Part shown: positions 26,853-49,455 of the stretch, one piece after another
Numbering within the stretch: the first letter of the stretch is position 1
Layout of the letters: the number at the start of each line of letters is the position of its first letter
Assembly: GCF_006345805.1 (NCBI RefSeq)
Contig: NC_042999.1
Coordinates: 96,410,001-96,474,000 of the forward strand
Direction of reading: 5' to 3'
From: Octopus sinensis
Lineage: Eukaryota
Length of the DNA stretch: 64,000 bases
Notes under the pieces: model-generated
What the model was told of the DNA's origin: nothing
The model's database searches: none
Seen by the model: only the letters and a program-made list of their open reading frames with translations
Program-made: the position numbers and the translations under genes

Positions 26853-26858
26853 ACTTAC
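26853..26858 (-). promoter_or_regulatory. 5' splice donor of the phase-1 C-peptide intron
   Basis: Minus strand AAT TAT G|GTAAGT is a consensus donor. The read-through ORF beyond it (GKSLLLYSMLFF...) has no insulin similarity. Confidence 0.88.
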
Positions 26859-27087
26859 CATAATTTCTTCTTTGCCTTGGTCCATCGGAATATCCGCCAG
26901 GACTACAAATAAGTCGCAAAAAGTTCGGTATTTTGTCGCCACAGTAACCACCTGACGCGGCACCCTGACGGATTGTTTCTTCATTACAGGTGTGCTCTAA
27001 ACCGGCTATGACCAGCTGCCAGTTGAGTAGGCTGATAAGGAGAGCCAAAAGCATTGTCCATGTCGTACACATGTTGCAGGATTTCAT
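26859..27087 (-). CDS. Insulin-like peptide (molluscan insulin/MIP type), coding exon: signal peptide + B chain + start of C peptide (partial CDS, ends at a phase-1 donor)
   Basis: Translation: MKSCNMCTTWTMLLALLISLLNWQLVIA-GLEHTCNEETIRQGAASGGYCGDKIPNFLRLICSPGGYSDGPRQRR-NY. It has a hydrophobic signal peptide, the canonical B-chain CG-x10-C, an extra N-terminal Cys (EHTCN, like Aplysia insulin EHSCN) and an RQRR furin site. Acceptor tttcctttttgtgctcgtttttcAG| gives exon start 27095; donor TATG|GTAAGT gives exon end 26859. Confidence 0.93.
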
Positions 27088-27095
27088 TGAACCGG

Positions 27096-27125
27096 CTGAA
27101 AAACGAGCACAAAAAGGAAAGATTT
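27096..27125 (-). promoter_or_regulatory. 3' splice acceptor (polypyrimidine tract + CAG) of a 5'-UTR intron of the insulin-like gene
   Basis: Minus strand aatctttcctttttgtgctcgtttttcag|CCGGTTCAATG; the ATG follows 8 nt into the exon. A 5'-UTR intron is typical of insulin genes. Confidence 0.7.
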
Positions 27126-27238
27126 TCGTAGCCATAGATCTTTATAAAACGCGCCGGCGGCGAGTGCAAAGCGAGGTTCGTTGGCCTCAGCCAACCACAC
27201 ACGCGCGCGCATGCATCTCGCCCATTCCTCTTTCTCTC

Positions 27239-27289
<51 letters not shown>

Positions 27290-27329
27290 ACTAACTCTTT
27301 CTTTCCCTCTGTGTATGTGTGTGTGTATG

Positions 27330-27376
<47 letters not shown>

Positions 27377-27381
27377 TAATT

Positions 27382-27437
<56 letters not shown>

Positions 27438-27459
27438 TATATATTATATATTATATATG

Positions 27460-27492
<33 letters not shown>

Positions 27493-27698
27493 CATATCAC
27501 TCCACCCTCAATGTCGATCTCTGTCTAACTGTCAGGAACCCTCCTTGTCCCTCTTCATTTTCTGCAGTTCTACCTATCATCCTCTCTAACACTCCCACTC
27601 TGGGCTCGTCTTCTAATTTTTATTTCTCTCTCTTGCTTTCTCTCATTCTCTCAATCCTTGTGTCTCGTTCCTTTCCTACCCCCAATCTCTTGCTCACC

Positions 27699-27739
<41 letters not shown>

Positions 27740-28716
27740 TTTCACACATACTCTCCCTCTCTCTAATTCTTTCGCTATATCTTTCCCTCAATGTCTATCT
27801 CTATCTCTCTTTCATACACACACACACACACACAAACACAAACACACACACATGCTCCATGAATCTCCTCCCCTGTCCTTCAACATATTCAGTTCCCCTC
27901 TTTCACTGTTTTTACTTCCCTTACTGCATCATCATTTCCGTTAGCTCTCATCATCCTCTCACTCTCCCCACCCACTTCTCTTTGTCCGTCATCACTTTTA
28001 CTTTCTCTACCACGTACGCAAACACACACAAACATTTATACATAACATTATACGAGCATACATATACATATATATTATGATTGATAGATACCTATATATA
28101 CATATAAACATATATACGTAAAAGCATACGTTCATATCTAGCTATATGTGTGTGTTTATGTAAATATATAACTAAATATTTATATGTACATATACGTGTG
28201 TATATATACGCGCGCCTACACACACACACATATATATATATATATACACACACACTCACACACACACACACACACACACCACATATGTATAGACATGCAT
28301 GCATGTATGTATGTATGTATGTAGTATGTATGTATGTATGTATGTATGTATGTATGTATGTATACACGCACACATGTCGATACAGATAAATGCATGTATA
28401 TATATGCATTTAATACACATAAATATCTATATATATATATATATATATATATATTCCCTTTTTTGTATCATCTGTCTAGATGTTTTGCGTTCTTGTCCCA
28501 TTTTTTGTATTCTTTCTATATATATATATATATAATATATATATATTATATATATACATATATGCGTAAGTAGACATGCACAGATCGATCGATAGATAGA
28601 TATATCAGTATACATACGTAATTATATGCGCATATGTACAAACATATATACATAAATATGTGTGTATATGTGTGTGTGTGTGGGAGTATGTAAGCATGTG
28701 GTTATATCATTCTATA

Positions 28717-28773
<57 letters not shown>

Positions 28774-28984
28774 AACAAAAAAGTTATATCATTCTATATT
28801 ATATATATATAAACAAATATATGTACATAAACAAAAAAGTTGTACATATCTATGTGTGTGTATCTAAACACTGATATAAATAAGTGCGTGCGCACACAAT
28901 TACGCGCGCGCGCAGGAAAACGCATTCACGCGCGCGAAGAAATGGACCAAGTTTGAAACAAGTTGATACTTTTAAATATTTAAA

Positions 28985-29470
28985 GATCATCTATGCCAGA
29001 TAGGAAAAGCATCAAATAAATTAAGTTATAGACTGACCAGGTCAAAAGCTCCTTATAGCAAGAGACTAAACAAATATTGTCAAATAAGTGTTAGCAGTCC
29101 TAATGTGGTACATATGGCCTATCTTTGCGTTAGGTATGACCCAGAACATAAACAACCAAGTGCAAAACTTATCAATGCTGCAGGGGTATTGTTTCAAAGA
29201 AGAATACCGAAGGTATCTTATGCAAACACTGAGGTCCATAAAGAAGCAAAGACCACTAGAAAGTTTCTGAAAAACGTAAGGAGATGCTAGGTTCTGTTTA
29301 TTGGCTCCTTATACGAAAAGAAAAAAAAAATATGAGTTGGAGACAACTCGAAAATTAGAAGGGAAAACCCAAAGAAGTCACAGAGAGAGCGGGGAATGAG
29401 GGGGAGGAGAAGATATTCGATGGCCTTAACAGCTGGCTTCAGAAAAAGCAGCCCAACAGTGTACTAAGTT
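28985..29470 (+). mobile_element. RTE-type LINE, decayed ORF2 C-terminal fragment
   Basis: Translation QIGKASNKL...RRIPKVSYANTEVHKEAKTTRKFLKNVR...GRREKIFDGLNSWL matches the RTE post-RT pattern (RIGKAS...RRIL.I.W...NTEVL...GKR.RGR.R). Confidence 0.65.
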
Positions 29471-30162
29471 GTGTGCGAGAGGGAAGGACATGGAACTCCA
29501 CGATTGCCGACGCCAGTAGGCATCGTGTATAAAGAGGAAGATGAAGTTACCGATATACATAAATACACACACAGACATATAAACATGTGTATATATAAAA
29601 CTATGCCCAGATTACGTGTGTGTCAGTGAATCCGTGTGACTGTTCACACACATACACATATGCATTATATATATATTCATCACACACGTACACAACACAC
29701 GCACACACACACATATACACACATACACAGACATATACAGACACATATACATACATGTGTAAGGGCATACACACACGTACATAAATACATGCATACATGT
29801 ATAAACGTGTGTGTGTGTGTGTGTGTAGGGCAGCTATGGAAGCAGTAATAAAAATGAGCATTTGAGTGTGCGTTTGTGTGTGTACACACACACACATACA
29901 TACAGAACACGCACAGACCGGCAACCAGCAGACACTCATATAAAGAATTTATTGATATATTTATACATATGGATCGGTATACATATATTTACACATAAAT
30001 ACATACATATAGATGTTTATACATATATACATACACGCACGTATAAATACACACACACGCACACACACACACACACTCTCTCTCTCTCTCTCTTTATAAA
30101 TATACATATATTCATATGCAAATATATATACATATATATTCATATGCATATATATATATATG

Positions 30163-30201
<39 letters not shown>

Positions 30202-30277
30202 TACATTCATATATATATATATATACACAAACACGCAGATATTAAACATATACTGTATGTGTATGTATGCATGTATT

Positions 30278-30324
<47 letters not shown>

Positions 30325-30453
30325 GTGTAGGTGTGTGTGTGTGCGTTTATATATTATATAGTTGATATATTTATGACGTATATTCATCATATATATATAT
30401 ACACACAATATGCATGTTACAAATAGATTTCATGTATATATGTGTGTGTTCAT

Positions 30454-30679
30454 TTATTCTTTTACTTGTTTCAGTCATTTGACTGCGTCCATGCTGGAGC
30501 ACCGCCTTTAGTCGAACAAATCGACCCCAGGACTTATTCTTTGTTAGCTTGGTACTTATTCCATCGGTCTCTTTTGCCAAACCGCTAGCTTACGGGGACG
30601 AAAACACACCAACACCGGTTGTCAAGCGATATTGGGTGGGTGGGGGACAAACACACACACGCACACAAAGACACACACA

Positions 30680-30715
<36 letters not shown>

Positions 30716-30840
30716 TACGCATATATACGACGGGCTTCTTTCAGTTTCCGTCTTCTAAATCCACTCACAAGGCTTTGGTCGGTCCGAGGGTATAGTAGAA
30801 AACACTTACCCAAGGTGCCACGTAGTAGGACTGAACCCAT
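30454..30840 (-). mobile_element. Family B SINE, reverse orientation, with internal (CA)n expansion
   Basis: tcttttacttgtttcagtcatttgactgcgtccatgctggagcaccgcc...gacgggcttctttcagtttccgtc...ccaaggtgccacg is the reverse complement of 12391-12758. Confidence 0.85.
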
Positions 30841-31642
30841 GTGTATATTTCTCCTATGTATTTCATATACAAATTTTGTATATACACTAAATATATGTTA
30901 CATATATTTTTACAAATTATATATAAATCCTATACTTATATCACACACTATGCAAATATAGAGAAGCACCCACATACACGTGTTTTATACACACACGAAC
31001 ACTAACAAACACACACACTCTAACACACACAGATACTCGCATAAAACGTACACCCGCGCAAACCTACACACACACGCGCACATACATATTAAATGTTAAA
31101 TGAAAGTGTTTATCTTAATGCAAATTAAAGTATAACAACATAAAATTCAGAGTAGGGACATACAGTACAGAGAATAAAACCAGCTTCAGTGAGTGGCTGA
31201 TTATGCCGTCAGGCGAAATTTAAAACCAGTCTTATATGCAATATATATTACCACTATATTCATATGTACATATATATATATGTGGGGTGGGTGCTTGCCT
31301 GTGTGTGTATGTGTGTAAACAGACACACACTTATTGCTTTACATATTCAGAATATACCAATTTTATTCTTTTTCTTAAGTTTTTCAGTAGGTACAGGTTG
31401 TGTGGCACCAGCCTTGTCGCAATCAACCCCGAAAATGAATTTCGTAACTGTTATTATCAAGCTGATGTCTGGAACACATCATGAAACCCCCATGGAAAAA
31501 AATTGCTACACACACACACACGCACACACACATACAAACATACATATGTATATAAGTATAAGTACATATAATGCATAATTAAATATATGTATATACCTAT
31601 ATAAGCATACAATACATGATTATATATGTATATACATATTAT

Positions 31643-31692
<50 letters not shown>

Positions 31693-31745
31693 GTATATAC
31701 ATATATATAATTATGTATTGTATGCTTATATAATGTAGTATAATA

Positions 31746-31969
31746 CGAGGTGTCGATGAAGTTATAAAGTGTTACTCAGGATCTCAACTATGCACCTATT
31801 ACATCCTATAGCAGAAACAGCTGTAAGTGTTAGAGTTCATAAGATAATCTTTTATTCCAATGCTATTTCATTTTCTGATAGATATATGTATAATCACATA
31901 TATAGATGTATGTGGGTGAGTGTATATATATATATATATAATGACACCTTATAACTTCATCGACACCTC

Positions 31970-31970
<1 letters not shown>
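31746..31970. mobile_element. Mariner-type MITE (about 225 bp) with 30-bp terminal inverted repeats
   Basis: Left TA|CGAGGTGTCGATGAAGTTATAAAGTGTTA versus right end (reverse complement) TT|CGAGGTGTCGATGAAGTTATAAGGTGTCA. TA-CGAGG termini are typical of mariner elements. Confidence 0.75.
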
Positions 31971-32022
<52 letters not shown>

Positions 32023-32043
32023 ATATATATATAATATATATAT

Positions 32044-32250
32044 TGTAAAATTGAAGAAATTGGAGTCATCAAGAAGGAGTACGGTTGGACAGTTATTTTT
32101 TCAATCACTTCAATTGTTTGTACACAATGTAGTTCTCCAAAAATACCTGAACTTTTGCAGAATTACGTTGTGTGGAGACAATTGTAGTGATTAAATAATA
32201 ACTGTCCAACCGTATTCTTTCTTATTAACTCCTATTTCTTCAATTTTACA
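32044..32250. repeat. 207-nt near-perfect palindrome (fold-back)
   Basis: Arms 32044-32142 and 32153-32250 pair almost throughout, with a loop of about 10 nt (atacctgaac). Confidence 0.9.
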
Positions 32251-32382
32251 TTCACACACAACGAATGCCCAAACAGAAATTTGGAAGTATATAATGATAG
32301 TACCGGATAGTATTGGGTAATTCTGAGAGTGGACGAGCTTTATACTGTACTCTGCCACATACCTTACAGAATGTATCATAAC

Positions 32383-32422
<40 letters not shown>

Positions 32423-32462
32423 GTGTGTGTGTGTGTATGTGTATCTATAATTTCTTCAATTT

Positions 32463-32494
<32 letters not shown>

Positions 32495-32602
32495 AAGAAA
32501 AATAAATTCACGAGATATTTTGATCAAATCCACTACAAATGTTTCGAGTCATCCAGCATCTTTATCTCACAGGTATGATACTGTACTATCAGTTGTCTTG
32601 CA

Positions 32603-32658
<56 letters not shown>

Positions 32659-33472
32659 GACATACGTGTGTGTGCAGAATTTTCCCCTACTTTTCTTCTC
32701 AAATAAGTCCAATATGCTAAAAGTGACCAAAGCTTGAATTGAACCGAAACTCTAAGTTTCAGTACAAACAAATTCAATGATCTCCCATTTCATTCGCACG
32801 CTCATACACATTCATATAATCTCATAAGCACATACATGGACACAACAATGTTTCTGAAGTAGATTATATATTTAGTTTTAGTTCATCTGCAATTGGTACA
32901 GCATACTAGAAACAGGTTGACTTTCTGCATAAATTGGCCTTTCTGCTTTTAAAATATTAGGAAACACAAACTTTGAAATGCTGATTATCTGGTATTATTA
33001 GTTTGTTTGAGCGCACAATGCATTTTCCGTCCTCATTGCAATCTATGCCCCAGAAACTTACTAATATCCGACAATACACTTCGACTTCGAATTATTGACG
33101 AAGGCAGAAGTACCTCCATAAGATGCTCCGCATGAGATGCACCGTTTTGAAGGAACTGAGACGAAAAGTGACTGAAGCGGTTCAAACAATGAGTAAAAAT
33201 ACCCTTCGTTTATCCACTTAGAATATAGTTTAGGTGTCTTGGTATAATGCTTTAGAGGTAGACTGGCTAAGAGGCCTATTTTCTCAACAACATCATGTAC
33301 ATCCTACCGAAGAGAGTGACAAGGCCCAAAATATATAAGTAATATATATTTTTAACTGAACGCCACGCATCCATTTCCAAGTAATTATATATATATATTA
33401 TATATATATTATATATATATATATGTGTTTGGTGGTGTGTGTGTGTGTGTGTGTGTGCGTGTGTGTGTGTGC

Positions 33473-33520
<48 letters not shown>

Positions 33521-33644
33521 CTACTGCTTGAAGCTTACAAACTTCTTACACTTCGGATCTTATGATCGTATTCACACACACACATACTCACATACACACA
33601 CAGATGTATGTATATATAGCGGGAGAGAAAGAGAGCGAGAGAGG

Positions 33645-33680
<36 letters not shown>

Positions 33681-34186
33681 AGGTAGATAGGTAGATAAAT
33701 ATTTATATATGGACACCTGTATACATGTTATATATTTTCTTATGATTGTAAAATCTGTCAAGAAATGAACCAATATTCAATGAATAATCCAAATGCTACA
33801 ATGAAACCTTTTATCGAAGCGGTTTTAAGAAAAATATCTATAATATCTATAATATTGATCCTACAAGTATAACTAAGAAGCTCAATAGTAGAAGAAATAT
33901 CTCATAGTACAGTACACGGTGTAACATAGAAGTACATAATGTCTTAACTAAATTTTTCTTTACTTTGTTTACAACATTCTGATAAAGTATATTCATAAGC
34001 CTTGCAGCTAAGCAATTTCAGTTCCACACATTTCTCTAGAAAGATCGCAAAATGACCTGTTGCTTAATTTGCTAGTTATTAAAGTATTTAATACGTCACA
34101 GACCCTAAGACAGTATGTCACGGTTAAACTTATTCAAACAACAAAATTGACATTGAGATGTATTAATATATACGCAGATAGACAAA

Positions 34187-34269
<83 letters not shown>

Positions 34270-34559
34270 ACATACATACATATCACTTTATCAAAACTTA
34301 AATGCGTGTGTGCGAGTGAATAACACAATATATTTTGTTATGTTGTTCACTATTGTCACTCACGGAGCATGCTTCACTAACAGTCATTGGTTGTCCATGT
34401 AGCTTTGAACTGGTCAACCTTTGTAAGCTTTTAATCCAATTACAACTGCTATAAAGCATGTAGAATAGGATAATATAAGGAGGAAGCAATGAAGGAATTA
34501 TTAATGAATTTATAAAGTAAATTGCTATTTGGAAAGGGAGACCAGTTTCAGGAGGAAAA

Positions 34560-34702
<143 letters not shown>

Positions 34703-34899
34703 GTTTCTTTATTAGCCACACAGGGCCGAATACAGAGGGAAGAAAATACAATGTAGAGCTTTTCTTTTTCGAAGATAGAAAAAAAAGGAGAAAAATAATA
34801 TTCTGATCGAAAGGGATCGTGAGAAAAAGAAGAAAAAAAACGATCAAAAGGGATCGTGTATCACAGAAATATTTAAAAAGTGTTAAGAGCAAGATTAGG

Positions 34900-34987
34900 T
34901 TTATCATTGGAAAGAAAAGCCTACGGAAAAGACCATGGTAACTTCAGGCAAGGAGGGAGCAAACACATGAGAGCAAAGAGCTCTCTC

Positions 34988-35018
<31 letters not shown>

Positions 35019-35640
35019 TCGATTCGCAGGATCATGCTTAAAGTAGTTTCGTCACTCGTACGTACCATCTTTGCTACATTCACCCACCTTTTATTGAAAA
35101 TTTCACGAAACAAAACTTGCCTCTCTATTCTCACCTTCCTTTTCAAGTGGTACTTGAAAAAGCTGAGCGATTTGCCAAAGGGATAAGTGCTTGCCTCTAA
35201 ACCTTTCGCTCGAGTCCCCCACACACATTCTTTCACCATGGCCTCCAGTACGATGAAGACTGCCTTGCCTTCCCGGTTAAGAGAAGGTGGCGGAGCAATT
35301 TTCGCATTTTCACGATAGACTCGGCCAACAGACAGACTCGTCCCACACTTGACAGCAGTCGTTCGGCGTAAGCCCACTGGTCCGAAATGGTTGGATACTG
35401 CACGAGTGCGCGCAGAACGGTTTCGTCGCTCTGACCGCATCTCAGGCAAGTCGGTCCGGTGTGTCTCGAACTGTGCCTGTAGAGCTTATTCCGAAAGAGT
35501 AATAATGCCTCTCGATAGCACTGCCAGGGATCCTGGCGATTGTCCATAGGTCCCGGCCAACAGGTCCTGTTGAGTTCAAGCACCGCCACCAAACAACCTC
35601 CAAACCATCTATCTCTATTTCGGAGTGTAAGTCCAATTAA
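34900..35640 (-). mobile_element. Tx1/L1-clade LINE 3' fragment (Zn-knuckle and C-terminus), frameshifted
   Basis: CYREALLLFRNKLYRH...TCLRCGQSDETVLRALVQYP...VGRVCLLAESIVK, then in a second frame SLNREGKAVFIVLEAMVKECVWGTRAKG...FFKYHLKRKVRIER...FNKRWV. This is the CxxC-x8-H-x4-C-type ORF2 C-terminus. Confidence 0.8.
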
Positions 35641-36864
35641 TTTGAGCGTTTTCTATATTGAGCATCTCTGGATCTCATTTGTTGACATGTCTGTGTGTGT
35701 GTGGTGTGTGTGTGTGTGTGTGTGTGTGTGTTGTGTATGAGAGAGAGAGAGAGAAAATTATACAAAAACTGGTCCCCTTTTCTGAATAACAATTGCGAAT
35801 TTCTCTGCCTGTGTCTGCTTGGTTTCCTGGCCTTTAGACTCAGTTCTTTGGGATCAATCCTCAGAAATGGCATATATATAGAATCAGGATAAACCCCAGG
35901 AGTTTTGTAACACCTTTACTTCTTACATCCAATAATGTGCGAATTAAGAAGTATAGAAAGCAAACAAGCTGAATATTGGTTGGAGAATTATAGTTAACCT
36001 ATTTAGGACATAAATGATAGACAATAAGAATATTAAAAGTTTTGGCGGGCGGGGTGAATTTTGGAATTTATTAACTTTTTCATATGCGTCAACATGTTGG
36101 TTTTAGATATTATGCTTTTGAGTAGTAATTTTGTTATTAGCCAAATCATTTCTCTTCAGACGAAATCCATGGAACTTTAAGTGATAGCCAGTCTCGTCAT
36201 ATTGAGTAAATTCTCCAAGAGGAAAAAGTTCTTTTATATTATGAGCCAACTTAATCTTCAAATTATTTTTAAAGGTCAAATTCGCGAGCAGTAAAAAAAT
36301 ATATTTAATATTTTGCAAAGACGTTTAGTAAAAAGTTGTACAAGTCATGTCAAGATAGAAAGGAAGCCAGACAAGAGCGAAATTGACAAGATGTGATATA
36401 TTGGGGAGAAAAAGTTAAAAGCTAGAATTAAACCTAGGGCTTACAGGAAAAAATGGAGTGGGGGGAGGGAAGGTTGAAAGAAGTTTGGCTCGAAATAGTC
36501 GGGTGAAGTTTTAGACAATTACTAAAATTCGGCAGGACCAACGTTCACGATTGGGCAAAGTTTTAACTTGAAAATTTACGCATGTTAAATTTTATGCAAA
36601 TATAAAATTATTGATGCTCTCTTATATTCTCCTTTTTCTGCGATCTTACTTTAGAGTGAAGTCCCAACAACTCTCCACAGTTGCTAGGCTAAAATCTGCC
36701 CGGAGGGCGTTCTTTTTTGTTAGTACATTACATACATAATATATGCATATCACACGCACTTGCGCATAAACCTTAGTACACATAGTCGGAAGTGAACATA
36801 TCTGTGATTACACAAAGGAAAGAAGGGAAAAGAGAAACAGGGAGAGGGATATATATATAGTGAG

Positions 36865-36931
<67 letters not shown>

Positions 36932-37902
36932 CGCGCTGACAGACACAGACGCACGTGCATAGAACAATTACACACATACGTGCGCGCGCGCGTAAATATG
37001 GATTTAAGCGAACACAGAGAAATACCAGAAGCGAATATAATTGAAAAGTGTTATCTAAACACGAAGGAATTCACCTCGTATATCTCGTTCTTCGGAATCT
37101 GGTAAACATTGTTAGCAGAAGAATTTCCAACTCTACCTACCTTGCGAAACAAAAAAAAAAAAAAAAAAAAATTGCGCCTTTGAGGTCAGTAGGTTCAAAG
37201 ACAAAATAATTATAATCCCAGACGGTCACCATCGAGAAGAAAAAAGTAAACGATGAAATATTTGACTCGCTTCTGATCATTGCTATACGTTAAGTCCATC
37301 ATAAGATGTTTCTCAGATAAACAGATAACCATTTCTCGATGACCTATAGGTGTAGTCATACTATAAAGATTGTATCTCATAATCCAACCCTTACCTCTGA
37401 TGATGGATGCTCAGGAAGAAACATTACAACGGTCTCAATGAATACGCCACGCAACACTGATGATGCAGAAGCGATATCTATAGGTGCAAAGCACAGTGCC
37501 GACCTAGACTGCTACATCAGTTTAATGGACGGTCATTCAAGGAAAGGTTTTTAGATCACACCTATTGTTTCATATAATCGAGGCGACGGATCTAGCTAAC
37601 GATGTCTAGCAACAGAAAAGCACAACATAGCTGTAAAATCGTTGGCAAAACAAACTATTTCCGTTCATTAATCTGTCTCATTTTTTAATATTTTCTTTCT
37701 TTCCCTTGAATAGACACATAAACATACCGAACGATCGAAAAACCGAATTTTGATAGAGTTCAGCGAAAGAGCAAAGAGAAATAAGCAAGAGTATATATGA
37801 GACGAAATCATGATCTCGCAAATTCCATATTTTTTCTTATAAAAGTCGGCTTTCTCACGTTCTATATTATGACCCAAAACCACACACACTCACACACACA
37901 AC

Positions 37903-37952
<50 letters not shown>

Positions 37953-38125
37953 TGCACAAATCCTGTTCTTAATATTTTTATTAACAAAGTAAAATACAAT
38001 GATTGACAATTATACTACCTAGATAAACAGACGCTTTAACAATTTTTGTTGATTCTCCCTCGTTTTGGTATTATACCCTAATTATTAAAGTGTAATGATT
38101 TATTTATTGCAATTTGAACGTCATT

Positions 38126-38183
<58 letters not shown>

Positions 38184-38310
38184 ATGATCTGGTTCTTGAC
38201 TGATGACTGAGGGCTTCGAATGTCCCGTCCTGTGGTTCTGTCTTGTTCGCTCTGTGGTGTTTCATGTTCTTGTCCATGTCTGTAATTATTTTTACTGTTT
38301 ACCTATATAT

Positions 38311-38381
<71 letters not shown>

Positions 38382-39603
38382 TGTATGTATCAGCTCAATT
38401 TAGGTATGAACCTTGTAGTTTGTTTTATAAACCTCGTCAACGGATAATTGACTATCAGACACAGTTTCACAATGAAAGTAGATCGTATTAATGAAGTGAC
38501 GTTCGGAAACTCATGGATATCTCTAGAGTATATATAAAACAATGTGAAAACAGGAGAAGAGCAAATACACTTCGTGACATAGTACTAAAATTATTTCATC
38601 TTTATTTTACCAGTAGATAATTGACGAAATATTATGATATAATAAATACATTATATTCATTATATAGCATCTGCATTATTTCAGCAAGATTGGTAAATAA
38701 AAACTCCTGAGGTATGAGCACAGAGTGTTCACTAAATTAAAGCATGTTCCACAGAATATATGCTTCACCACATTCGAAAAATATAAACAAACTCCTCTAG
38801 ATTCGGCAAGTATCTGCTAGTAAAGGAAAGATGAAACAATAAAACCTTTCCTCAATCCAGTCTCTCCTGTTTACGCATGGCTTTACACACACACATGTGC
38901 GCACACTCAGGATTCGTTATAATTTGGGTATTTCAACGTGTGGGACTGCAAGAATGGTCGGGTACTAGGCTTGCAATGTTCAGTTGTTGTTAGCAGGCAG
39001 AATTCTGAAAGTATGCGCGTGCATGTCTGCATTTCGAGCCAAGTATTAGTACCTGCCTAACTTTGATTAAAATCATGTGAAGATAGCGCATTTTAGTCAT
39101 GATATAAAGTAAGTATTCATCAATAAAATGTTACTGAAACAGCTGTGTGAACTTTAAACTCCAGGTTTGTGTGTGTGTGTGTGTGTGTGTGTAGGTCGAA
39201 GAATAACCGAGAAATTGAACATCTATTATTCAAGGAACTAATTATACTCACATTATGTCCAAACATTCTTCAATTTGTATTGACCCATTATCTGAACAAC
39301 TTTCAAAATACCGTTTGAGCTTCAAACAAACACATAGATGAACATATGCGACGTAAATACTTTAATATGATTGAATTAGTTTATGCAGCCATATTGCAAA
39401 TTGTTATCATTTGAACCCAATACACTTATTAACACTTATAACACGTATTACCCTACCATTTTTGTTCATAATTATTTTTGCCGCTGTTATTTCTGGCTAA
39501 CAATTGAAGAGTATTTTGTTTACATAATACCCGATTGTAGTAATTTTAATTATTTCCTCCTAATTCTTTTTCTGTGAACCTAATGGCTCATACATACATA
39601 CAT

Positions 39604-39671
<68 letters not shown>

Positions 39672-39747
39672 TAATTATCTTGTTAGCCTATAAACGTCGG
39701 AGTTATAATTTTCATGACACTTGATATACATTTATATATAGATACAT

Positions 39748-40980
39748 AAGCTGTTCATGGAGCAAGTGATACCCAGGCCAACCAGGGGCAACAACATATT
39801 GGACCTGTGCTTCACAAATAATGTGGACCTTATCCATAATGTGAAGGTGACATCAACGTCACTCTCGGATCACAACATTGTTGAACTATGTGTGGTTTTG
39901 CGTCAACTATTGGTATCTACCCTATCATGAGGACTCAAGCCTTATCCAACCTGAATTCCCATAAGGCAAAATGGGAATCGATCTGCAAAAAGATCCATCA
40001 ACGAAACTAGTCCAACATTCTTTGTATGCAAGACATTGATTTGAAACTCAGCCAGTTTATGTTAACTGTGCAAGCTATTTGCACAAAACACATCCCAGAA
40101 AGAAAGGCCAGCACACTGTTAAACACGATTCCCACGGACAGAAAATGCTAATGAGACGCAGATCAAAGATCTCAAACGGCTGAATAGGCAACTGAAGGGT
40201 AGAGTGAAGTCTATCTTAACACCGACGCTCCTACAACGGGAAAGAGCAGGGCTGTGGAAAGCATAAAAACAAATCCCAATGCTTTCTATAAATTCGCAAA
40301 GGAAACTACAATATAAAATAGGACTATTGTTCCAAGGGAATAGCTCACTGACGGCGGACCCAGGAAGGATAAGTGGAATATTCAGTGAACAATTTAAAAG
40401 TGTCTTCACTTTCCACCTTGGACACATGCAGATTAAAAATCCGGCTGAATTCCTTGATATTGCAGCTCTAAAAAAGGAGGAAACAGATGTAACAGCGGCC
40501 ATAGATGAAATGAGCTCATGCTCCGCCACTGGTTCTGATGACTTCTCAGCTATTCTCCTAAAGCCATGTAAGTAGGCTTTAGCGAAACCACTTCAGATAC
40601 TTTGTATTGTACCAAAGGTACCATCCAATCCATCAAAATTCAGGACCAGGTACTGCAATAGTCTACGGTTAAAAGCCCACAGCTCTTCAATGCCCTGCCA
40701 CAAAAATTGATTTGCATAAGGTGGAAGTAGATGTCTTCAAAAAGGAACTAGACATCGTTCTCTCCCCAATACCGGATGAACCAACAGCCCGACATGAGGT
40801 ACAACGAGGGCAGCGGAATCAAACTCCCTTACACACCAAATTTACCAACAACTAGGACAAAGGCAGATACAGGAGTGGCGATGTGAAACACCCAGACTGA
40901 GGAAGTCAGAAAGACCATGGTGGTGCTCCAGCATGACTGTGTCCGTATAGCTGAAACGAGTAAAGGAGTAAAAGAGTATA
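39748..40980 (+). mobile_element. CR1-type LINE, 5'-truncated and internally deleted (endonuclease end + linker + ORF2 C-terminus/3' tail)
   Basis: LFMEQVIPRPTRGNNILDLCFTNNVDLIHNVKVTSTSLSDHNIVEL is an APE C-terminus. It continues ...FSEQFKSVFT...AIDEMSSCSATGSDDFSAILLKPCK*ALAKPLQIL and jumps at about 40602 to ...SKFRTRYCNSL...QLFNALP...VDVFKKELD...IPDEP...AAESNSL. Confidence 0.85.
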
Positions 40981-41431
40981 TATAATATATATATATATAC
41001 AGGTATGTATGTATGTATCTCTGTAAGTATACATGAAGATAACTAGCTGATAGTGACTCTTTCTTTGACTTCTGTAGTCAACATATTCATTGCCTTTTAG
41101 CTATAATCTTTGTTACGGCGTCTATTTTTCAAGTCTAACACTAAGCAAAAAAGCCATGTAACTAGAAACCATTACACAAGATGTGTTCACATAATGTTTT
41201 TCTAATTTCTGAAAATTATGAAAGCCAACTATTCCGTCTTCAGAAAGGAAGGCTTAAGGAATATCCTTCATAAAGGATATTAGTAGTCATCAGTTCCATC
41301 GTCAAAGAGTCATTCTCTCCTCGACGATGAAACTGGTAATTACAAATACCTTGTACTAAGAATATTCGTGATTCTACATATGTACAAATAGTGTGTATGT
41401 AGTGTGTACAATCAGTGTATATATATATATA

Positions 41432-41572
41432 TAAGGTTGTCCTAAAAGTTCATAGAAAGTCTTGGAAAATAATGGTCTTTATTTTGAGGAATAATTTTTG
41501 TTGTTTTTGTTAGTACTTGGCAAGTAAAAATTCAATTTTCGCAAGTGCTTACAAACTTTTGGGACAACCTAA
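41432..41572. mobile_element. Mariner-derived MITE (about 140 bp)
   Basis: TIRs TAAGGTTGTCCTAAAAGTT (41432-41450) and AACTTTTGGGACAACCTAA (41554-41572), flanked by TA. They resemble the Hsmar1/MADE1-type TTAGGTTGGTGCAAAAG terminus. Confidence 0.8.
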
Positions 41573-42439
41573 TATATCGTTAACTAATCGAAACAAGTTG
41601 TATAGACATATATAGTATATATGCATAATATGAAATATGAAGTATAACTTTTTGCATGTGCCACGCTTTCGTTAGCTATTTTGCTGCTCATGTAGTCCAT
41701 CACAAACATACCAACCAGCACCGTCCTTACAGTCGTCGCCCAGCGGAACAACATTGTACATGCACAGTTTCGATTATCTGTAGCTACCCGTAGATTTACT
41801 GGCGGTTGGTGTAACAGTATTTATAAAACAGGAGATGGAATATGTAATAGACTTTATTGGGTACAACACATTGTTTCGACCCGTTCTTGGTCTCTTCATG
41901 TACATGAATAGAAAGTCTCACTTGAGATTTTTTGAGTTGGCTTACGTACCGCTATATGTCCATCAAATTCGAGAATGAGTAAAATAAGAGAAAAATAATT
42001 GAAACTCAAAAATTCAAATATGAACGTGGAGATTATACCTTCTGGATTAGAGAAAATGACGTAATCAGCTTTCGCTGTTGTAACTTTTAGGAGAAAGAAA
42101 AGGAAGTAGAAATTGAAAGGAAGATAATAGTTAGACGAAACATTTTTTTTGTTCATGCTTAGACGCATATATACAAACATAAAGGTGTACATATACGCAC
42201 ATATACATACGCGCTCACATGCGCACATCCAAGTATATGGGCATATATACATACAACTAGATACACGCGCATACGCACACGTATGGACGAATATATACTT
42301 ATATATGTATAGTAACTCGTATACGCAGGGACACACGTGTATATGTACATAAATATACGTACATAGCGTATATATTTGTATCTTTATATGCTTCTTGCGT
42401 ATAAATATACATAACTATGTACGTACTTGGCGCGAGAGA

Positions 42440-43010
42440 CCTAAGCTTTGGAAAGAATAAATCATATCAAAAACCTAGCATGGAGTTTGGCATGGTATTC
42501 ACCAAGTACCTGCAGCATTAAAGGCAGAAAACATAGGCAACAATTGAGGTCATCAACCACATTACGGTCAAGTGGTAAAGAAATTTTTCTAAATATTATC
42601 TTCTTATAATGCATGATACGGTGGCCAGAACAGTTTGAAGCAAGGTAAGGCAAAAGTAAGTACCAACAAACGAAGTGAGCCCGAAAGCTCAAAAGAATAT
42701 ATAGGTGGAACTTAAAAATTAAAACAGCCACAAAGTTAAACAAGCGACCATATATTGTTGTATGGGATTACAAAGAAAAAAATATGCCCTGTTGTGGAAT
42801 CAACAGCTCTCTGGGTACCAATGTGGTCAGTGCAAGTGAAAGAAAAGGTTTATAGTAACTTGATAAGGACTATGCAAATCCAGTACTAAAGGTACGCCTT
42901 CATTTTTATGCTTATTATTATTTGAGGAACAGGGTATGTACCAACCTGCCTGCGGCAAAGTATGGCGGAACTGGGGCTCTTGAGGAAAGAAAGCAGCTCC
43001 TTCATTTATA
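42440..43010 (+). mobile_element. Restriction-like endonuclease (RLE) non-LTR retrotransposon 3' fragment (R4/NeSL/CRE-type), decayed
   Basis: IEVINHITVKW*RNFSKYYLLIMHDTVART is a Zn-knuckle remnant plus an RHD-like motif. It is followed by RWNLKIKTATKLNKRPYIVVWDYKEK (RPD motif) and ...IRTMQIQY...FIFMLIII...GYVP. Confidence 0.62.
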
Positions 43011-43184
43011 TGCTACAAATGACCACGATATTTGACGCCATAAAAATCTTCAAGACCTTCTTAAAGTTTTAAGTATGGTGAAGAAAACAAACAAGACGCT
43101 TTCCATCATAACTTTGCTACCAAGAAAGATGGCCGATCAAAATCAACTCTAAATTAAAAAGCGGAAAGGAACACACATACACAC

Positions 43185-43226
<42 letters not shown>

Positions 43227-43571
43227 TGTACATATATACATACATGTGTATAAATATACTCATACACCTCACTAAATGTATATACATCTGCATATATCAA
43301 CAAAATGCACATATATAGATACACATATTTGAAAATAATTATAGTAATTAATGATGTAGATGTGTATTTATACATGTATATTTATACAGACGTTTATAAT
43401 TATACTCCTAGATAACTGATACAAATATGCAAAGTATATCTACATAATTATAAACATGTATGCCTATAGATATATATATACACACACACGCAGACACGCA
43501 TACATGCATACATACATACATACATACATACATACATACATACATACATACATACATACACACACACACAT

Positions 43572-43618
<47 letters not shown>

Positions 43619-44070
43619 TATTATACACTCCCACGAACGTTATATTTATATTTAGAGATCTTGGTATAGATACAAATATGGCTGCAAATAGATAGCTTTG
43701 AATGTATAGGACAGATAATTAATTTTTGGAATATACGCATATTAATTAGACACAATTTTGAGTGGAACTCACATCCCAATATAGACTTCTCTATATAGAC
43801 CCGTAAACAAAAGTACGATCAGATTAACATATAAATACAGTACCACCCACAAGTACGCATACCAGCACATCCTCCATCCATGCATCGATCATCCATTATT
43901 ACACATGTTCATATAATAAATTCATCAGTATACATATCCATCCATCTATCCATGTCCCCTCTTTGCAACAATGCTCATTTATATGTAGGTGTCTATGTGT
44001 GATGTAAATCCGTTTGATTCATTTATATACGACTGTGTACTTATGTCTATGTTACACACACATATGGCCG

Positions 44071-44145
<75 letters not shown>

Positions 44146-46914
44146 CGTATTCATATTTGAATGGATGGCAGCATAGATTGTAACGTAATGAACCAAGTTC
44201 GTGTGTTACGCTTTAAACAACCTTCACTTTAAAACGAAATTGAAGACATAATTGCATCCTTTAGCATAATGAAATAACATTATAGAAATCTATAAATTTA
44301 TGTAACAAACCAGAAATAAGAAGATTCCTCCTAGTTTGTATAACCTTTCGGTAATTGTTATTTTTTGAGGTAAGAATAAGCTAACATTTCAGAAAAAAAG
44401 TAATTTTGTCATTGTATGATAATTTTATTTCTACAGTTTAAATATATCTACAAGGTAATAAATGTCTATAACTATAGAGTGGTCTTGTTTAATTCGAGAT
44501 GAACTCTAATCAAGCCAACCTATGATCAAAGGTATTCTAACCGTGATCGCCCCATCTACCACTCCAAAGAAAATGAAATAAAACCATATTTGATAACGTG
44601 GCTTCATCATTTTTGATCATTTTTGATCATATTTTTGCTCGATTAAACTAATCCGGAGTTAAACAATAGCAACAACATCATAACAAGCAAAGTGCTTGTT
44701 TGGGGGAGATTAAGTTGCTATTTTCAATGTGTCATTCGATCACATATAGGCTTTGTCCATTGGCTGCAGTTTGGTAACAATTTTATATCTATTAGGTGAT
44801 TTTTGGCAAAGTTAATGAAAATGACGTTTCACGCCTGTCTTTGATCTATACTGGATGTTGACCAGTTGATGAGTATTTTTGCTATTGTTTTGTCTCTATG
44901 AACATTGATGAAATATATTGGTTTTAACGCCTGACACTTGCAATGTCTTCATATGTTTGCAGAGGTGATAGGAAACATTTTATTTTAGTTTAATCTACGA
45001 CACCTAACAACGCATAAATACTTGAAAGCAAATTTACAGAGGTAATTTTATTTAATGGCAATATAAAGAGGAAGGATAGCTCTCATATCCTTTTTCTCGG
45101 GCCCTTAAGAGGAAGGGAAGATGTTTTCTTCAAAGAGAAGACACGTGCGACATTCTTGCAACAGTGCTTGCAAGAGAGTGTTAACCACTAAAAGCACCGA
45201 AGGTTTAGTTGCTGGTTCTCAGTATAGATGTAAGGGACAATTCCGTAGCCCTTGTTACCAGAACATGATATTGAAAATAATTGTCAATGATGCACAGATG
45301 AAATGGATTGAATCATATATATATATCTTAAAAGATTCAGATTTTTATATATCGATTTGTTGGTGATTAGTTATATTGATTCCTGTGGGAAAATGAATGG
45401 GTCTTCTGACGTTCATATATTTGATAAGGGCTATTGTACATTGGAAGTATAGTGAAAATCGACTCAACGGAAGTACACTTTTTCACACATTCTCATTAAT
45501 ATATGTAATTATTCTTATTCTTTCTTTTCCAGTTTATTTCCATATGAAACTTAAACTGTATACATCACTAGTAAGAGTTGCTTTTATACATGGAAGAATC
45601 ATGGCATATAAATCAAAACTAAAGCTAATTGTTTTGGATACTTTGAAAATAAAGTATTACAAAGGAGCTTGGAAATAAAATGACGGATTTTTGTGAGAAA
45701 TGTAAGTGATCCGAGATATAACGTAGCATTATATATAGACTAGGAAATACTGAAGAGTAGATGGTTATGGGTAAGTCACATACTTCGTCCCTTGAAAACC
45801 AGCAAATAAATCAAACAGTATATGGACAGGCCAAGTTATCCCCTTAGTCACTTTGGGTGAGAGCAATGCTGAGAGAAGAAGGGAAACAGAAGATAAGAAG
45901 CACTTTAGTACTGGGGTATATTTCTACTAAATTACTGTTATATTACTGTTTAAACAATATTGATGATATAATTGTGCTTATACTTGTAATAATAATGGTG
46001 TGCCAGTGTTAGAAACCATTATTATTATTTAAAATAATCTAAATCAATGTTTCAAATACGTATTTTTATCTTCAGTAAGATGTCTAACTCATGACAACAT
46101 TTTTGCACTTTTTTGCTATTAGAAATTTGATGAATGAATGTGCACACAGCTGTTGTTCTTTTTCTAATCTTGCACTTATGATTAAAACGGGATGGGGGGC
46201 GAAAAAGTGTTACTTTTAATTCATTCATTCATTTATTCAATAACTTTCTAATTTTTTAATTTGAAAGAAAATTGCATCTAATAATTTTTCGATTATATTA
46301 TTATTCATAAGGAATTACAACAAAAGCAAAAGGCCATAAATTTAGGAAGCAGGAGCAGTTGATCATTTTGGCACTAGCACTTCAATGGTACTTTATTTTA
46401 TCGATCTAGGAAGAATAAAATTCGAACATGACGGAGTTTGAGTGCAGAGTATACACAGTGGGAACAAATACCACAAGACATTTTATCCGACTCTCTGTCG
46501 ATTCTGCCAATCTAGCTTCGATTTCGGATAAAGGAACATGGGTGATGGGAAATGTCAGTTAAATCGGCCATACACGACTTCCTTGATATTTATTTCATTG
46601 ATCCTGGAAGGGTGAGTGATAAGATCGAGCAAGACGGGGTTTGAACTCAGAACGTAAAATGAACTAAATATATTTTGTTGCATCTTGGGAGGATCATTGC
46701 GCCAGTAATAGAAGAACATCTTCTTCAACACAAGTGTTCAGATCAAAATTATTGCAAACCAAATATAAAAACGAGATATTCTAAGCTAAATATATACTGT
46801 TGAGCATTATTTATGCCCAGCGCACAACCGATTCTGCCAGCCAACTCCACAAGCTCATTCCACTCCACTTTGTGACATGTGGCAACAAATACATTAAAAT
46901 GCATCTCCGTAACA

Positions 46915-47850
<936 letters not shown>

Positions 47851-48556
47851 GCTTACAGGTCGAGTCAACGAGAAAACCTCTACGTGATCGTTGTATCTGC
47901 TAGAAATAGTAATCACATTTCTCTAAAATCACAACGTTTATAAGTTAAGAAACACTGATTAATGTTGTCAAAGGTACACTGAGCCTGGAGAAGGTGGAGA
48001 TAGTCGAGGTTGAGCGCTTTTGATTAGAAAAGTCTATTTGAACAGGGCCTGTTTGAGATAAGCGATAATAATTACGCGTAAAAATCAGCGAATACTTTTC
48101 ATAAGTTTCTCATTGCGCACACAAACACGCAACACAAATAAATACATACGAACTCGAGCACAGGTCTATGCATGCACACATAAATACATAAATCTATGCA
48201 TGCGCACATAAATAAAGAGGTAGACACGGATCCGTACATACTGCTTGATAAAGAAAAAGACGTATACGTTTACAGACAGAATCAGCTTTACACAATGCAC
48301 AACCAATTCACTTCCAATTGCACGTTAACACACACACACACGCACACATACACACAAACACACAAAGAGAAATACACACAAACAAACAGGTATACGTGTG
48401 TCAACGCGTTGGACAGTGCGTAAACACACCGTCACACAAACACACACGTGTCCACCACTGATAGATCCAAAACAGCCAGACAGAAACAAATTCGTAGTAT
48501 CACCACCTGTCTTTCGCACACACACCATCCCACCACACACAGACATAATCACACAG

Positions 48557-48589
<33 letters not shown>

Positions 48590-49334: not shown

Positions 49335-49455
49335 TTTTTCTTCTTCTTCTTCTTCTTCTTCTTTCTTCTTCTTCTTCTTCTTCTTCTTCTTCTTCTTCTT
49401 CTCTTCTTCTTCTTCTTCTCATTATTATCATCATCATCATTATTATTATTATAAT
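49335..49455. repeat. (CTT)n-(CAT)n-(ATT)n compound trinucleotide repeat
   Basis: Directly visible. Confidence 0.95.

What the first reader, a model, noticed from the sequence alone, without database searches (positions are those of the whole stretch)
26859..27095. Cephalopod insulin-like peptide exon with a three-Cys molluscan B chain, furin site and conserved intron positions
Seen: signal peptide, GLEHTCNEETIRQGAASGGYCGDKIPNFLRLICSPGGY, RQRR, a strong acceptor 8 nt before the ATG and a phase-1 GTAAGT donor just inside the C peptide. Established: Lymnaea MIPs and Aplysia insulin carry an extra B-chain Cys forming a fourth disulfide, and insulin genes have a 5'-UTR intron plus a phase-1 C-peptide intron. 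Inference: this is a secreted neuroendocrine hormone gene. The supplied 126-aa ORF is a chimera of intron and exon sequence, so naive annotation would get both ends wrong.
Basis: partly seen in the sequence, partly recalled or inferred. Interest (0 to 1): 0.78.

Follow-up and report, generated by a model that had tools for sequence, protein, structure and literature searches.

The report
Octopus insulin-like hormone gene, B-chain exon
This is a real exon of an octopus insulin-like hormone gene that encodes the secretion signal and the B chain. The gene is already annotated in octopus genomes and its cuttlefish counterpart has been studied, so it is a correct but ordinary finding.

Summary
On the minus strand, window 27095..26859 is an exon bounded by a CAG acceptor and a phase-1 GTAAGT donor. 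It encodes a signal peptide, a three-Cys B chain (C-x14-CG-x10-C) and RQRR.

Its 76 codons are 100% identical to the RefSeq Octopus sinensis proteins XP_036357072.1 and XP_029634273.1 ("con-Ins Im1" isoforms X1/X2, Pfam Insulin). They are 86% identical to an Argonauta hians orthologue and about 60% to the cloned cuttlefish insulin-like peptide.

The A-chain exon is not in the window. The O. sinensis coding span is 101.7 kb, which places that exon about 38 kb beyond the left edge. The coding tip of isoform X1's first exon (ATGACACCAG|GTAAAT) lies at 63431..63422, so intron 1 is 36.3 kb.

One correction concerns the 5' side. The ~130 nt upstream of the acceptor include TTTTATAAA and an in-frame ATG at 27135. 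They differ from Argonauta at only 3 of 129 positions, fewer than in the coding sequence. A cuttlefish mRNA reads straight through the homologous stretch and starts translation at the equivalent ATG. This stretch is therefore probably an ancestral proximal promoter or first-exon region, not plain intron.

The gene is already known, so interest is low.

The parts
26859..27095 (-). Exon 2, the main 5' coding exon of the insulin-like peptide gene. [quoted passage not shown]
   Evidence: Sequence read. The peptide is 100% identical to residues 7-82 of XP_036357072.1 and 86% identical to the Argonauta protein. Conservation with Argonauta collapses within about 10 nt after the donor.
27004..27087 (-). 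Signal peptide coding region (MKSCNMCTTWTMLLALLISLLNWQLVIA). The ATG at 27087 is the start codon of RefSeq isoform X2.
   Evidence: Hydropathy and the -3/-1 rule. The SjILP paper places cleavage before GLEH in cuttlefish. P0009 starts at MKSC.
26878..27003 (-). B chain, GLEHTCNEETIRQGAASGGYCGDKIPNFLRLICSPGGYSDGP, with three Cys (C-x14-CG-x10-C).
   Evidence: Alignment A3. GLEHTC, Q-G, CG, P and the last Cys are invariant across cephalopods and two gastropod insulins. The Cys spacing equals SjILP Cys48/63/75.
26866..26877 (-). RQRR, a furin/prohormone-convertase type cleavage site at the B chain / C peptide junction.
   Evidence: Read from the sequence. RQRR is conserved in Sepia and Sepiella, and only ERR is present in Argonauta. 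Cleavage itself is inferred.
26853..26858 (-). GTAAGT donor of intron 2, phase 1, inside the C peptide. Intron 2 runs from 26858 off the left end of the window.
   Evidence: The next residue in the RefSeq protein is Val (G|TN). Argonauta has the same phase-1 junction. The O. sinensis CDS span of 101,724 nt puts the stop codon near window coordinate -38,292.
27096..63421 (-). Intron 1 of isoform X1 (36,326 nt), from donor GTAAAT at 63421 to acceptor CAG at 27096.
   Evidence: Splicing 63431-63422 to 27095 reproduces MTPAGSMKSC... exactly.
63422..63431 (-). Coding tip of exon 1 of isoform X1, ATGACACCAG, followed by GTAAAT. The 5' UTR probably extends to about 63520, and a TATATAA lies at 63554-63548.
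   Evidence: This is the only match in the window to ATGACNCCNGGT (0.06 expected by chance), and it is on the right strand and side. The spliced translation equals XP_036357072.1 residues 1-82. The TSS and the role of the TATA motif are inferred. The region is not conserved in Argonauta.
27096..27232 (-). Highly conserved block directly upstream of the acceptor. It contains TTTTATAAA (TATAAA at 27146-27141) and an in-frame ATG at 27135-27133 (MATKIFPFCARFSAGS-). It is probably an ancestral proximal promoter, 5'UTR or alternative first-exon sequence.
   Evidence: Only 3 of the 129 nt upstream of the acceptor differ from Argonauta, against 19 of 228 in the CDS. The cuttlefish mRNA contig L002 contains the homologous stretch as exon, with GTTTTATAA and the ATG conserved and no AG at the octopus acceptor position. 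There is no RNA-structure signal (z = -0.09).

Best explanation
Window 27095..26859 (minus strand) is the main 5' coding exon of the Octopus orthologue of the molluscan-type insulin-related peptide gene. RefSeq annotates it in O. sinensis as 'con-Ins Im1' isoforms X1/X2, and it is the orthologue of cuttlefish SjILP.

The exon encodes the signal peptide, a three-Cys B chain, an RQRR convertase site and the first residues of the C peptide. It is spliced in phase 1 to an A-chain exon (…KR|DRNWSGIVCECCYNTCTIEELLDYC…). That exon lies about 65 kb downstream, outside the window.

Inferred pathway: the prepropeptide enters the secretory pathway and the signal peptide is removed before GLEH. Four disulfides form, namely the three canonical ones plus the extra B-chain Cys to the extra A-chain Cys. 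The C peptide is excised at RQRR and KR, giving a two-chain hormone that presumably acts on the insulin-receptor-type tyrosine kinase.

On the 5' side the exon accepts a distal first exon at 63431..63422 (isoform X1). It also keeps a strongly conserved proximal block that is exonic in cuttlefish and probably serves as a proximal promoter or alternative first exon in octopods.
For: Shown:
- Exon anatomy.
- 100% identity over 76 residues to XP_036357072.1 and XP_029634273.1, and to O. vulgaris CAI9719717.1.
- phmmer E = 1.8e-39 to the Argonauta protein in a library of 1.8 billion proteins.
- Pfam Insulin 34.7 bits against a cut-off of 23 for that orthologue, and precomputed PF00049 for all cephalopod hits.
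- The Argonauta locus has the same three-exon structure with two phase-1 junctions and a 92.5-kb intron 2.
- Exon 1 of isoform X1 was found in the window, and its splice product reproduces the RefSeq N-terminus.
- The Cys spacing is identical to SjILP, which has eight Cys and four disulfides.
- Canonical insulin genes have introns upstream of the signal peptide and within the C peptide (PMC5062327). The C-domain intron is phase 1 (PMC11863921).
- Conservation of the proximal block and read-through in a cuttlefish mRNA.

Inferred: the processing steps, the disulfide map, the receptor, and use of the proximal block in octopus.
Against: - The exon alone gives no Pfam, PDB or word-index hit, so family membership rests on full-length orthologues.
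- The A-chain exon is not in the window and could not be inspected for this genome.
- No octopus transcript data were reachable. Splice usage therefore rests on other groups' gene models.
- The AlphaFold model was unusable (pLDDT 39).
- 11 of the 14 codons that differ between Octopus and Argonauta are non-synonymous. This is looser constraint than expected for a core hormone, though the counts are small.
Confidence: 0.95

Rival explanations
1. The exon is also, or ancestrally, a FIRST exon. Under this reading, transcription starts at a proximal promoter just upstream. The start could be about 30 nt after the conserved TTTTATAAA, giving the MKSC… protein. Or it could lie further upstream, as in cuttlefish, giving MATKIFPFCARFSAGSMKSC…. 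The CAG 'acceptor' would then be an octopod addition that lets distal, lineage-specific 5' exons splice in. This complements the best explanation rather than excluding it.
For: - The 129 nt upstream of the acceptor differ from Argonauta at 3 positions, against 19 of 228 in the CDS. Unique sequence stays alignable at about 80% for roughly 1 kb upstream, while intron 2 becomes unalignable within about 10-20 nt.
- The cuttlefish mRNA L002 (spliced across the C-peptide intron) contains the homologous block, GTTTTATAA and the start ATG. It has CTG where octopus has the acceptor CAG.
- The cuttlefish N-terminus MVLSFVLFCISCSAS aligns without large gaps to MATKIF[P/L]FCARFSAGS.
- The distal first exons differ completely between O. 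sinensis (36 kb away), O. vulgaris (CDS span 182 kb) and Argonauta (1.8 kb away, next to a SINE copy).
Against: - All three octopod gene models splice at the acceptor, and none starts with MATK….
- TATAAA sits only 6 nt before the 27135 ATG. A TATA-driven start and use of that ATG are therefore mutually exclusive.
- Only two substitutions lie in the putative extra coding stretch, so there is no codon-level signal.
- No octopus transcript was seen.
Confidence: 0.4
2. An orphan or pseudogenised B-chain exon: a dead remnant with no A chain attached.
For: There is no CC-x3-C-x8-C motif anywhere in the 64-kb window outside low-complexity repeats. tblastn with the A-chain exon finds nothing.
Against: - The ORF is intact and 100% identical to RefSeq proteins that include the A chain.
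- The CDS spans of 101.7 kb in O. sinensis and 94.8 kb in Argonauta explain the missing exon.
- Both splice sites are intact and conserved.
Confidence: 0.02
3. A weaponised (venom or salivary) insulin rather than an endogenous hormone, as the RefSeq name 'con-Ins Im1' might suggest.
For: - The RefSeq name.
- A fairly high share of non-synonymous changes between Octopus and Argonauta in this exon. Conus hormone insulins evolve slowly and venom insulins evolve fast (PMC5062327).
Against: - The name is an automatic transfer from the nearest curated entry.
- The nearest Conus cluster representative is itself labelled 'hormone insulin-related peptide'.
- The cuttlefish orthologue is expressed in ordinary tissues, mainly ovary, and its knock-down lowers vitellogenin transcripts.
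- The B-chain core is invariant from cuttlefish to gastropods.
Confidence: 0.02
4. A chance open reading frame with a fortuitous Cys pattern in repeat-rich DNA.
For: The window holds many long spurious ORFs made by microsatellites.
Against: There were 0 occurrences in 200 simulated windows. Orthologues exist with E = 1.8e-39. Conservation is confined to the exon and its upstream block.
Confidence: 0.005

Closest known systems
Octopus sinensis 'con-Ins Im1' isoforms X1 (XP_036357072.1) and X2 (XP_029634273.1 / XP_036357074.1); Octopus vulgaris CAI9719717.1
   Same: The window's 76 codons, and the 82 codons after adding exon 1, are identical to these proteins. The splice sites are the same. This is the same gene.
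   Different: Nothing in the coding sequence. These annotations do not describe the conserved proximal block. The O. vulgaris model adds a 53-residue N-terminus from an exon outside the window.
Cuttlefish insulin-like peptide (Sepiella japonica SjILP, QHI00145.1; Sepia latimanus QHI00148.1), PMC9221753
   Same: An orthologue, about 60% identical. It has the same AGLEHTCNEETIRQG start of the B chain, the same Cys spacing, RQRR, KR before the A chain, an A chain of C-x-CC-x3-C-x8-C, and a C-terminal KDP… tail.
   Different: The cuttlefish mRNA starts translation 15 codons upstream of MKS, at the homologue of window ATG 27135, and is not spliced at the octopus acceptor position. The octopod models splice in distal exons instead.
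Gastropod molluscan insulin-related peptides (MIP type), e.g. Charonia tritonis insulin-like 2B and the Conus nerve-ring 'hormone insulin-related peptide'; Lymnaea MIPs (from general knowledge)
   Same: Eight Cys, the [AG]G[LY]EHTC B-chain start, the CG…P…C helix, a GI[TV]CECCYN A chain, and dibasic processing sites. Identity is about 40-48%.
   Different: The gastropod proteins end at …YCN, whereas the cephalopod proteins carry a 13-residue tail after the last Cys. The C peptides are not alignable.
Vertebrate insulin gene (INS)
   Same: A three-exon plan: one intron just upstream of the signal peptide and a phase-1 intron in the C peptide. The B-chain core is CG-x10-C with Leu/Ile/Val at the helix positions (general knowledge).
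   Different: Six Cys rather than eight, and introns of about 0.2-0.8 kb (general knowledge) rather than about 36 and 65 kb.

Membership tests
Insulin/IGF/relaxin superfamily (Pfam PF00049) | Profile match above the curated threshold | tested here: met
   The exon alone gives no hit. The full-length Argonauta orthologue scores 34.7 bits against a cut-off of 23. PF00049 is precomputed for the O. sinensis protein, which is 100% identical over the exon.
Insulin/IGF/relaxin superfamily (Pfam PF00049) | B-chain motif C-G-x10-C with a hydrophobic helix core | tested here: met
   CGDKIPNFLRLIC at residues 49-61.
Insulin/IGF/relaxin superfamily (Pfam PF00049) | A-chain motif CC-x3-C-x8-C | tested here: met
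   It is not in the window. It is present in the same gene's RefSeq protein (CECCYNTCTIEELLDYC) and in the Argonauta genome at L001 104587-104781.
Insulin/IGF/relaxin superfamily (Pfam PF00049) | N-terminal signal peptide and basic cleavage sites flanking a C peptide | tested here: met
   Hydrophobic core and V-x-A cleavage motif, by heuristic only since no SignalP was available. RQRR lies in the window, and KR precedes the A chain in the RefSeq protein.
Insulin/IGF/relaxin superfamily (Pfam PF00049) | Phase-1 intron in the C-domain coding region | tested here: met
   The donor follows 76 codons plus 1 nt. The Argonauta junctions are G|GTAAGT … cag|GA. The rule is stated in PMC11863921.
Insulin/IGF/relaxin superfamily (Pfam PF00049) | Insulin fold (three helices held by disulfides) | tested here: inconclusive
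   AlphaFold2 on a 5-sequence alignment gave mean pLDDT 39 and pTM 0.23. No fold search was run on it.
Molluscan insulin-related peptides (eight-Cys type) | An extra Cys N-terminal in the B chain, paired with an extra Cys in the A chain (C-x-CC-x3-C-x8-C) | tested here: met
   The window has B-chain Cys at 34/49/61, the same spacing as SjILP 48/63/75. The A chain of the RefSeq protein is C-E-CC-YNT-C-x8-C. The signature is quoted in PMC9221753. The disulfide itself is not shown.
Dilp7-type insulin-like peptides | [quoted passage not shown] | tested here: not met
   [quoted passage not shown] The criterion comes from PMC11863921. This gene is therefore not Dilp7-type.
Cone-snail venom insulins (Con-Ins) | Venom-gland expression and the venom-class signal sequence | not testable with these tools
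Only the RefSeq name points this way. The nearest Conus cluster representative is labelled as the hormone form.
Insulin-receptor (tyrosine kinase) ligands | Binding and activation of the insulin-like peptide receptor | not testable with these tools
   A cuttlefish ILP receptor is described in the literature (PMC9654127, listed). No binding data exist for this peptide.

The most novel reading that the evidence does not exclude
The octopod insulin-like peptide gene may run on two kinds of promoter. One is an ancient proximal promoter or first exon, the near-invariant 130-nt block with TTTTATAAA and the MATK… ATG, shared with cuttlefish across the octopod-decapodiform split. The others are young, lineage-specific distal first exons 2 to more than 100 kb away that splice into a CAG acceptor created within that old exon. 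The two classes could give tissue-specific expression (for example nervous system versus gonad) and slightly different pre-peptide N-termini.
Probability: 0.35. Interest if true: 0.3.

Novelty: already known. Interest (0 to 1): 0.15.

Why it matters
The gene is the likely main insulin-type hormone of octopuses. The role of insulin signalling in octopus is still described as unknown (bioRxiv 10.1101/340984), although an insulin-binding protein changes in the optic gland during maternal decline.

The practical value here lies in annotation.
- The gene spans about 100 kb with only about 460 nt of coding sequence.
- The early O. bimaculoides protein set holds only a 90-residue product covering the A-chain exon.
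- A prokaryote-style ORF call gets the 3' end wrong.

The conserved proximal block is a ready candidate for the gene's core regulatory element. None of this changes what is known about insulin-family biology.

Tried and rejected
**Searches with the exon peptide alone.** All found nothing, because half an insulin is too short and too diverged.
- Pfam.
- The word-indexed protein search, which also missed the 100% identical RefSeq protein.
- PDB phmmer.
- Literature search for the peptide strings.

**Looking for the A chain in the window.** Regex scans and tblastn gave only hits in Cys-rich low-complexity translations. These were rejected.

**Structure.** The AlphaFold2 model on 5 sequences had pLDDT 39 and was discarded, so no fold search was run.

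**The conserved block as a structured RNA.**
- The folding z-score was -0.09.
- Rfam gave only sub-threshold miRNA-family hits in TA/TG microsatellites, which are artefacts.

**Octopus transcripts and the window's own genome record.** Neither was found.
- Isoform X2 and the 126-aa ORF are not on record.
- The constructed 163-aa read-through protein may not be looked up, and no such protein appeared in the last homology search.
- The O. sinensis and O. vulgaris loci exceed 100 kb, so no DNA was returned.
- The O. bimaculoides partial protein is not on record.

**Other checks.**
- Pfam on transposon-like ORFs elsewhere in the window found nothing significant.
- A literature search for the Lymnaea MIP gene structure gave nothing usable. 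That point rests on PMC5062327 and general knowledge.

**Handling of P0003.** The third hit of the representative search (P0003) turned out to be a Conus hormone-type insulin that shares a 90% cluster with a named venom insulin. After learning this I did not fetch other members of that cluster, and I do not reproduce its sequence.

Full report
**1. What is in the sequence**

The feature lies on the minus strand.
- A 25-nt pyrimidine-rich tract ends in CAG at 27098-27096.
- The exon begins at 27095 and an ATG follows 8 nt later, at 27087.
- 76 codons and one extra base follow, up to G|GTAAGT. The last exon base is 26859 and the donor is at 26858-26853.
- The product is MKSCNMCTTWTMLLALLISLLNWQLVIA / GLEHTCNEETIRQGAASGGYCGDKIPNFLRLICSPGGYSDGP / RQRR / NY.
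- The hydrophobic core TMLLALLISLL and a V-x-A motif fit a signal peptide cleaved before GLEH. The cuttlefish paper reports the same cleavage point.
- The three Cys are spaced C-x14-C-x11-C, and the second is followed by Gly.

This composite pattern occurs once in the window and never in 200 simulated windows. The exon and the 137 nt upstream of it form a 47-53% GC island between (TA)n and (GA)n microsatellites.

**2. Identification**

The exon alone hit nothing in Pfam, the PDB or the word-indexed protein search. The exhaustive phmmer search found three relatives:
- a 150-aa protein, 86% identical over all 76 residues (E = 1.8e-39);
- two gastropod insulins at 48% and 39% identity.

Searching again with the first hit gave the following:
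- Argonauta hians 'con-Ins Im1-like'.
- Octopus sinensis 'con-Ins Im1' isoform X1 (XP_036357072.1, 153 aa).
- Octopus sinensis isoform X2 (XP_029634273.1 / XP_036357074.1, 147 aa).
- Octopus vulgaris CAI9719717.1 (203 aa).
- The Sepia latimanus and Sepiella japonica insulin-like peptides (161 aa).
- A 90-aa O. bimaculoides fragment that contains only the A-chain exon.
- A 129-aa O. bimaculoides paralogue.

All carry Pfam Insulin. The Argonauta protein scores 34.7 bits against a cut-off of 23.

The window's 76 residues are identical to the O. sinensis and O. vulgaris proteins, so the window comes from one of these or a very close relative. The name 'con-Ins' is an automatic transfer. The nearest Conus cluster representative is labelled as the hormone insulin, not the venom insulin.

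**3. Gene structure**

After …RRNY the RefSeq protein continues VSPYASRGLRHRSS…KR DRNWSGIVCECCYNTCTIEELLDYCKDPRDFRARVQQS.
- The Val fits the split codon G|TN, which confirms a phase-1 junction at 26859.
- No A-chain motif or tblastn hit exists in the window.
- The O. sinensis coding span is 101,724 nt.

Isoform X1 starts MTP-AGS-MKSC. The pattern ATGACNCCNGGT occurs once in the window (63431-63420, minus strand), with 0.06 matches expected by chance. Joining 63431-63422 to 27095-26859 reproduces residues 1-82 of XP_036357072.1 exactly.

From these facts:
- Intron 1 is 36,326 nt.
- The stop codon should lie about 38.3 kb beyond the left edge of the window.
- Intron 2 is about 65 kb.

A TATATAA sits 117 nt upstream of that first ATG. 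Its role is inferred.

The Argonauta locus (L001) has the same plan:
- exon 1 ATGCTCAATCACACACAAACAG|GTAAGG;
- exon 2, 1.8 kb downstream;
- exon 3, 92.5 kb further on, entered at cag|GA;
- both junctions in phase 1.

This matches the canonical insulin gene plan. One intron lies just upstream of the signal peptide and one lies in the C peptide (PMC5062327), and the C-peptide intron is phase 1 (PMC11863921). [quoted passage not shown]

**4. The 5' side is not plain intron**

*Octopus against Argonauta (alignment):*
- 19 of 228 coding positions differ.
- Only 3 of the 129 positions upstream of the acceptor differ. This block includes GCATGCGCGCGCGTGTGTGGTTGG, TTTTATAAAG and an in-frame ATG at 27135 (MATKIF[P/L]FCARFSAGS).
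- Unique sequence stays alignable at about 80% to roughly 1 kb upstream.
- Downstream of the donor, 8 of the first 20 bases and 25 of the first 40 differ.
- Apart from short dispersed repeats, this is the only homology between the window and the 115-kb Argonauta locus.

*Cuttlefish mRNA.* An RNA-seq contig from a cuttlefish (L002, SRR19578111) encodes the complete 161-aa precursor, so it is spliced across the C-peptide intron. It contains the homologue of the block as 5' UTR. GTTTTATAA lies just before its start codon, and that start codon aligns with window ATG 27135. It has CTG where octopods have the acceptor CAG.

*Distal first exons.* They are unrelated in the three octopod models.
- O. 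sinensis: 36 kb away.
- O. vulgaris: the CDS span is 182 kb, and its N-terminal exon is not in the window.
- Argonauta: 1.8 kb away, next to a SINE copy.

*Reading.* The block is probably an ancestral proximal promoter, 5'UTR or first-exon region, and octopods added an acceptor and distal exons to it. Whether octopus still transcribes from it cannot be told here.
- No octopus transcript was reachable.
- No protein starting MATK… is on record.
- The block shows no RNA-structure signal.

**5. Function**

By homology the product is a secreted two-chain hormone with eight Cys. The SjILP paper assigns four disulfides, including the extra B-to-A bridge. It reports highest expression in ovary and lower vitellogenin transcripts after RNAi.

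For octopus, the following are inferred rather than shown:
- processing at RQRR and KR;
- the disulfide map;
- the receptor;
- the expressing tissue.

Eleven of the 14 codons that differ between Octopus and Argonauta are replacements. They cluster in the B-chain tail and the junction with the C peptide. The numbers are too small to claim unusual selection.

**6. Verdict**

The gene is already annotated in RefSeq and its cuttlefish orthologue has been cloned and studied, so novelty is nil and interest is low.

Three refinements come out of this work:
- The A-chain exon lies outside the window.
- The distal exon 1 of isoform X1 is inside the window, at 63431-63422.
- The sequence upstream of the acceptor is a strongly conserved, probably regulatory or ancestrally exonic block rather than ordinary intron.

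Noticed in passing
window 30728-30822 (+), 12457-12555 (-), 55239-55334 (+), 55852-55935 (-); L001 71819-71913 and at least 7 other sites, including 9831-9962: A dispersed SINE-like repeat of about 95-110 nt (…ACGACGGGCTTCTTTCAGTTTCCGTCTACCAAATCCACTCACAAGGCTTTGGTCGGCCCGAGGCTATAGTAGAA…). It is shared by the window and the Argonauta locus at 73-89% identity. One Argonauta copy ends about 40 nt before that species' annotated first exon.
   Followed up: partly
window 51769-52281 (-), 34907-35652 (-), 40122-40592 (both strands): Long non-repetitive open frames that look by eye like decayed transposase or reverse-transcriptase fragments. Pfam gave no significant hit (best E = 0.12), so their nature is unconfirmed.
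   Followed up: partly
window 27233-27480 and 26500-26735, and throughout: Very dense (TA)n, (GA/CT)n and (CA/TG)n microsatellites flank the exon directly. They generate many spurious long ORFs and sub-threshold Rfam hits to mir-297, mir-3149, mir-466 and similar families.
   Followed up: yes
window 26860-27087 versus L001 11832-12059: Octopus and Argonauta differ at 14 codons in this exon, of which 11 are replacements. The replacements are concentrated at residues 56-75 (B-chain tail, RQRR becoming VERR). Residues 6-17 and 19-30 are identical even at silent sites.
   Followed up: partly
P0007 (O. bimaculoides A0A0L8GK08, 90 aa) and P0012 (O. bimaculoides paralogue, 129 aa): The O. bimaculoides protein set holds only the A-chain exon of this gene, fused to a spurious N-terminus. 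A second insulin-like gene, 44% identical, also exists in that species.
   Followed up: no
window 27500-27662 and 27921-28075 (minus strand) versus L001 11248-11420 and 9134-9288: Islands of unique sequence 0.4-1 kb upstream of the exon are conserved between Octopus and Argonauta, for example CGAGCCCAGAGTGGGAGTGTT and GATCGACATTGAGGGTGGAGT. They are possible distal promoter elements.
   Followed up: partly
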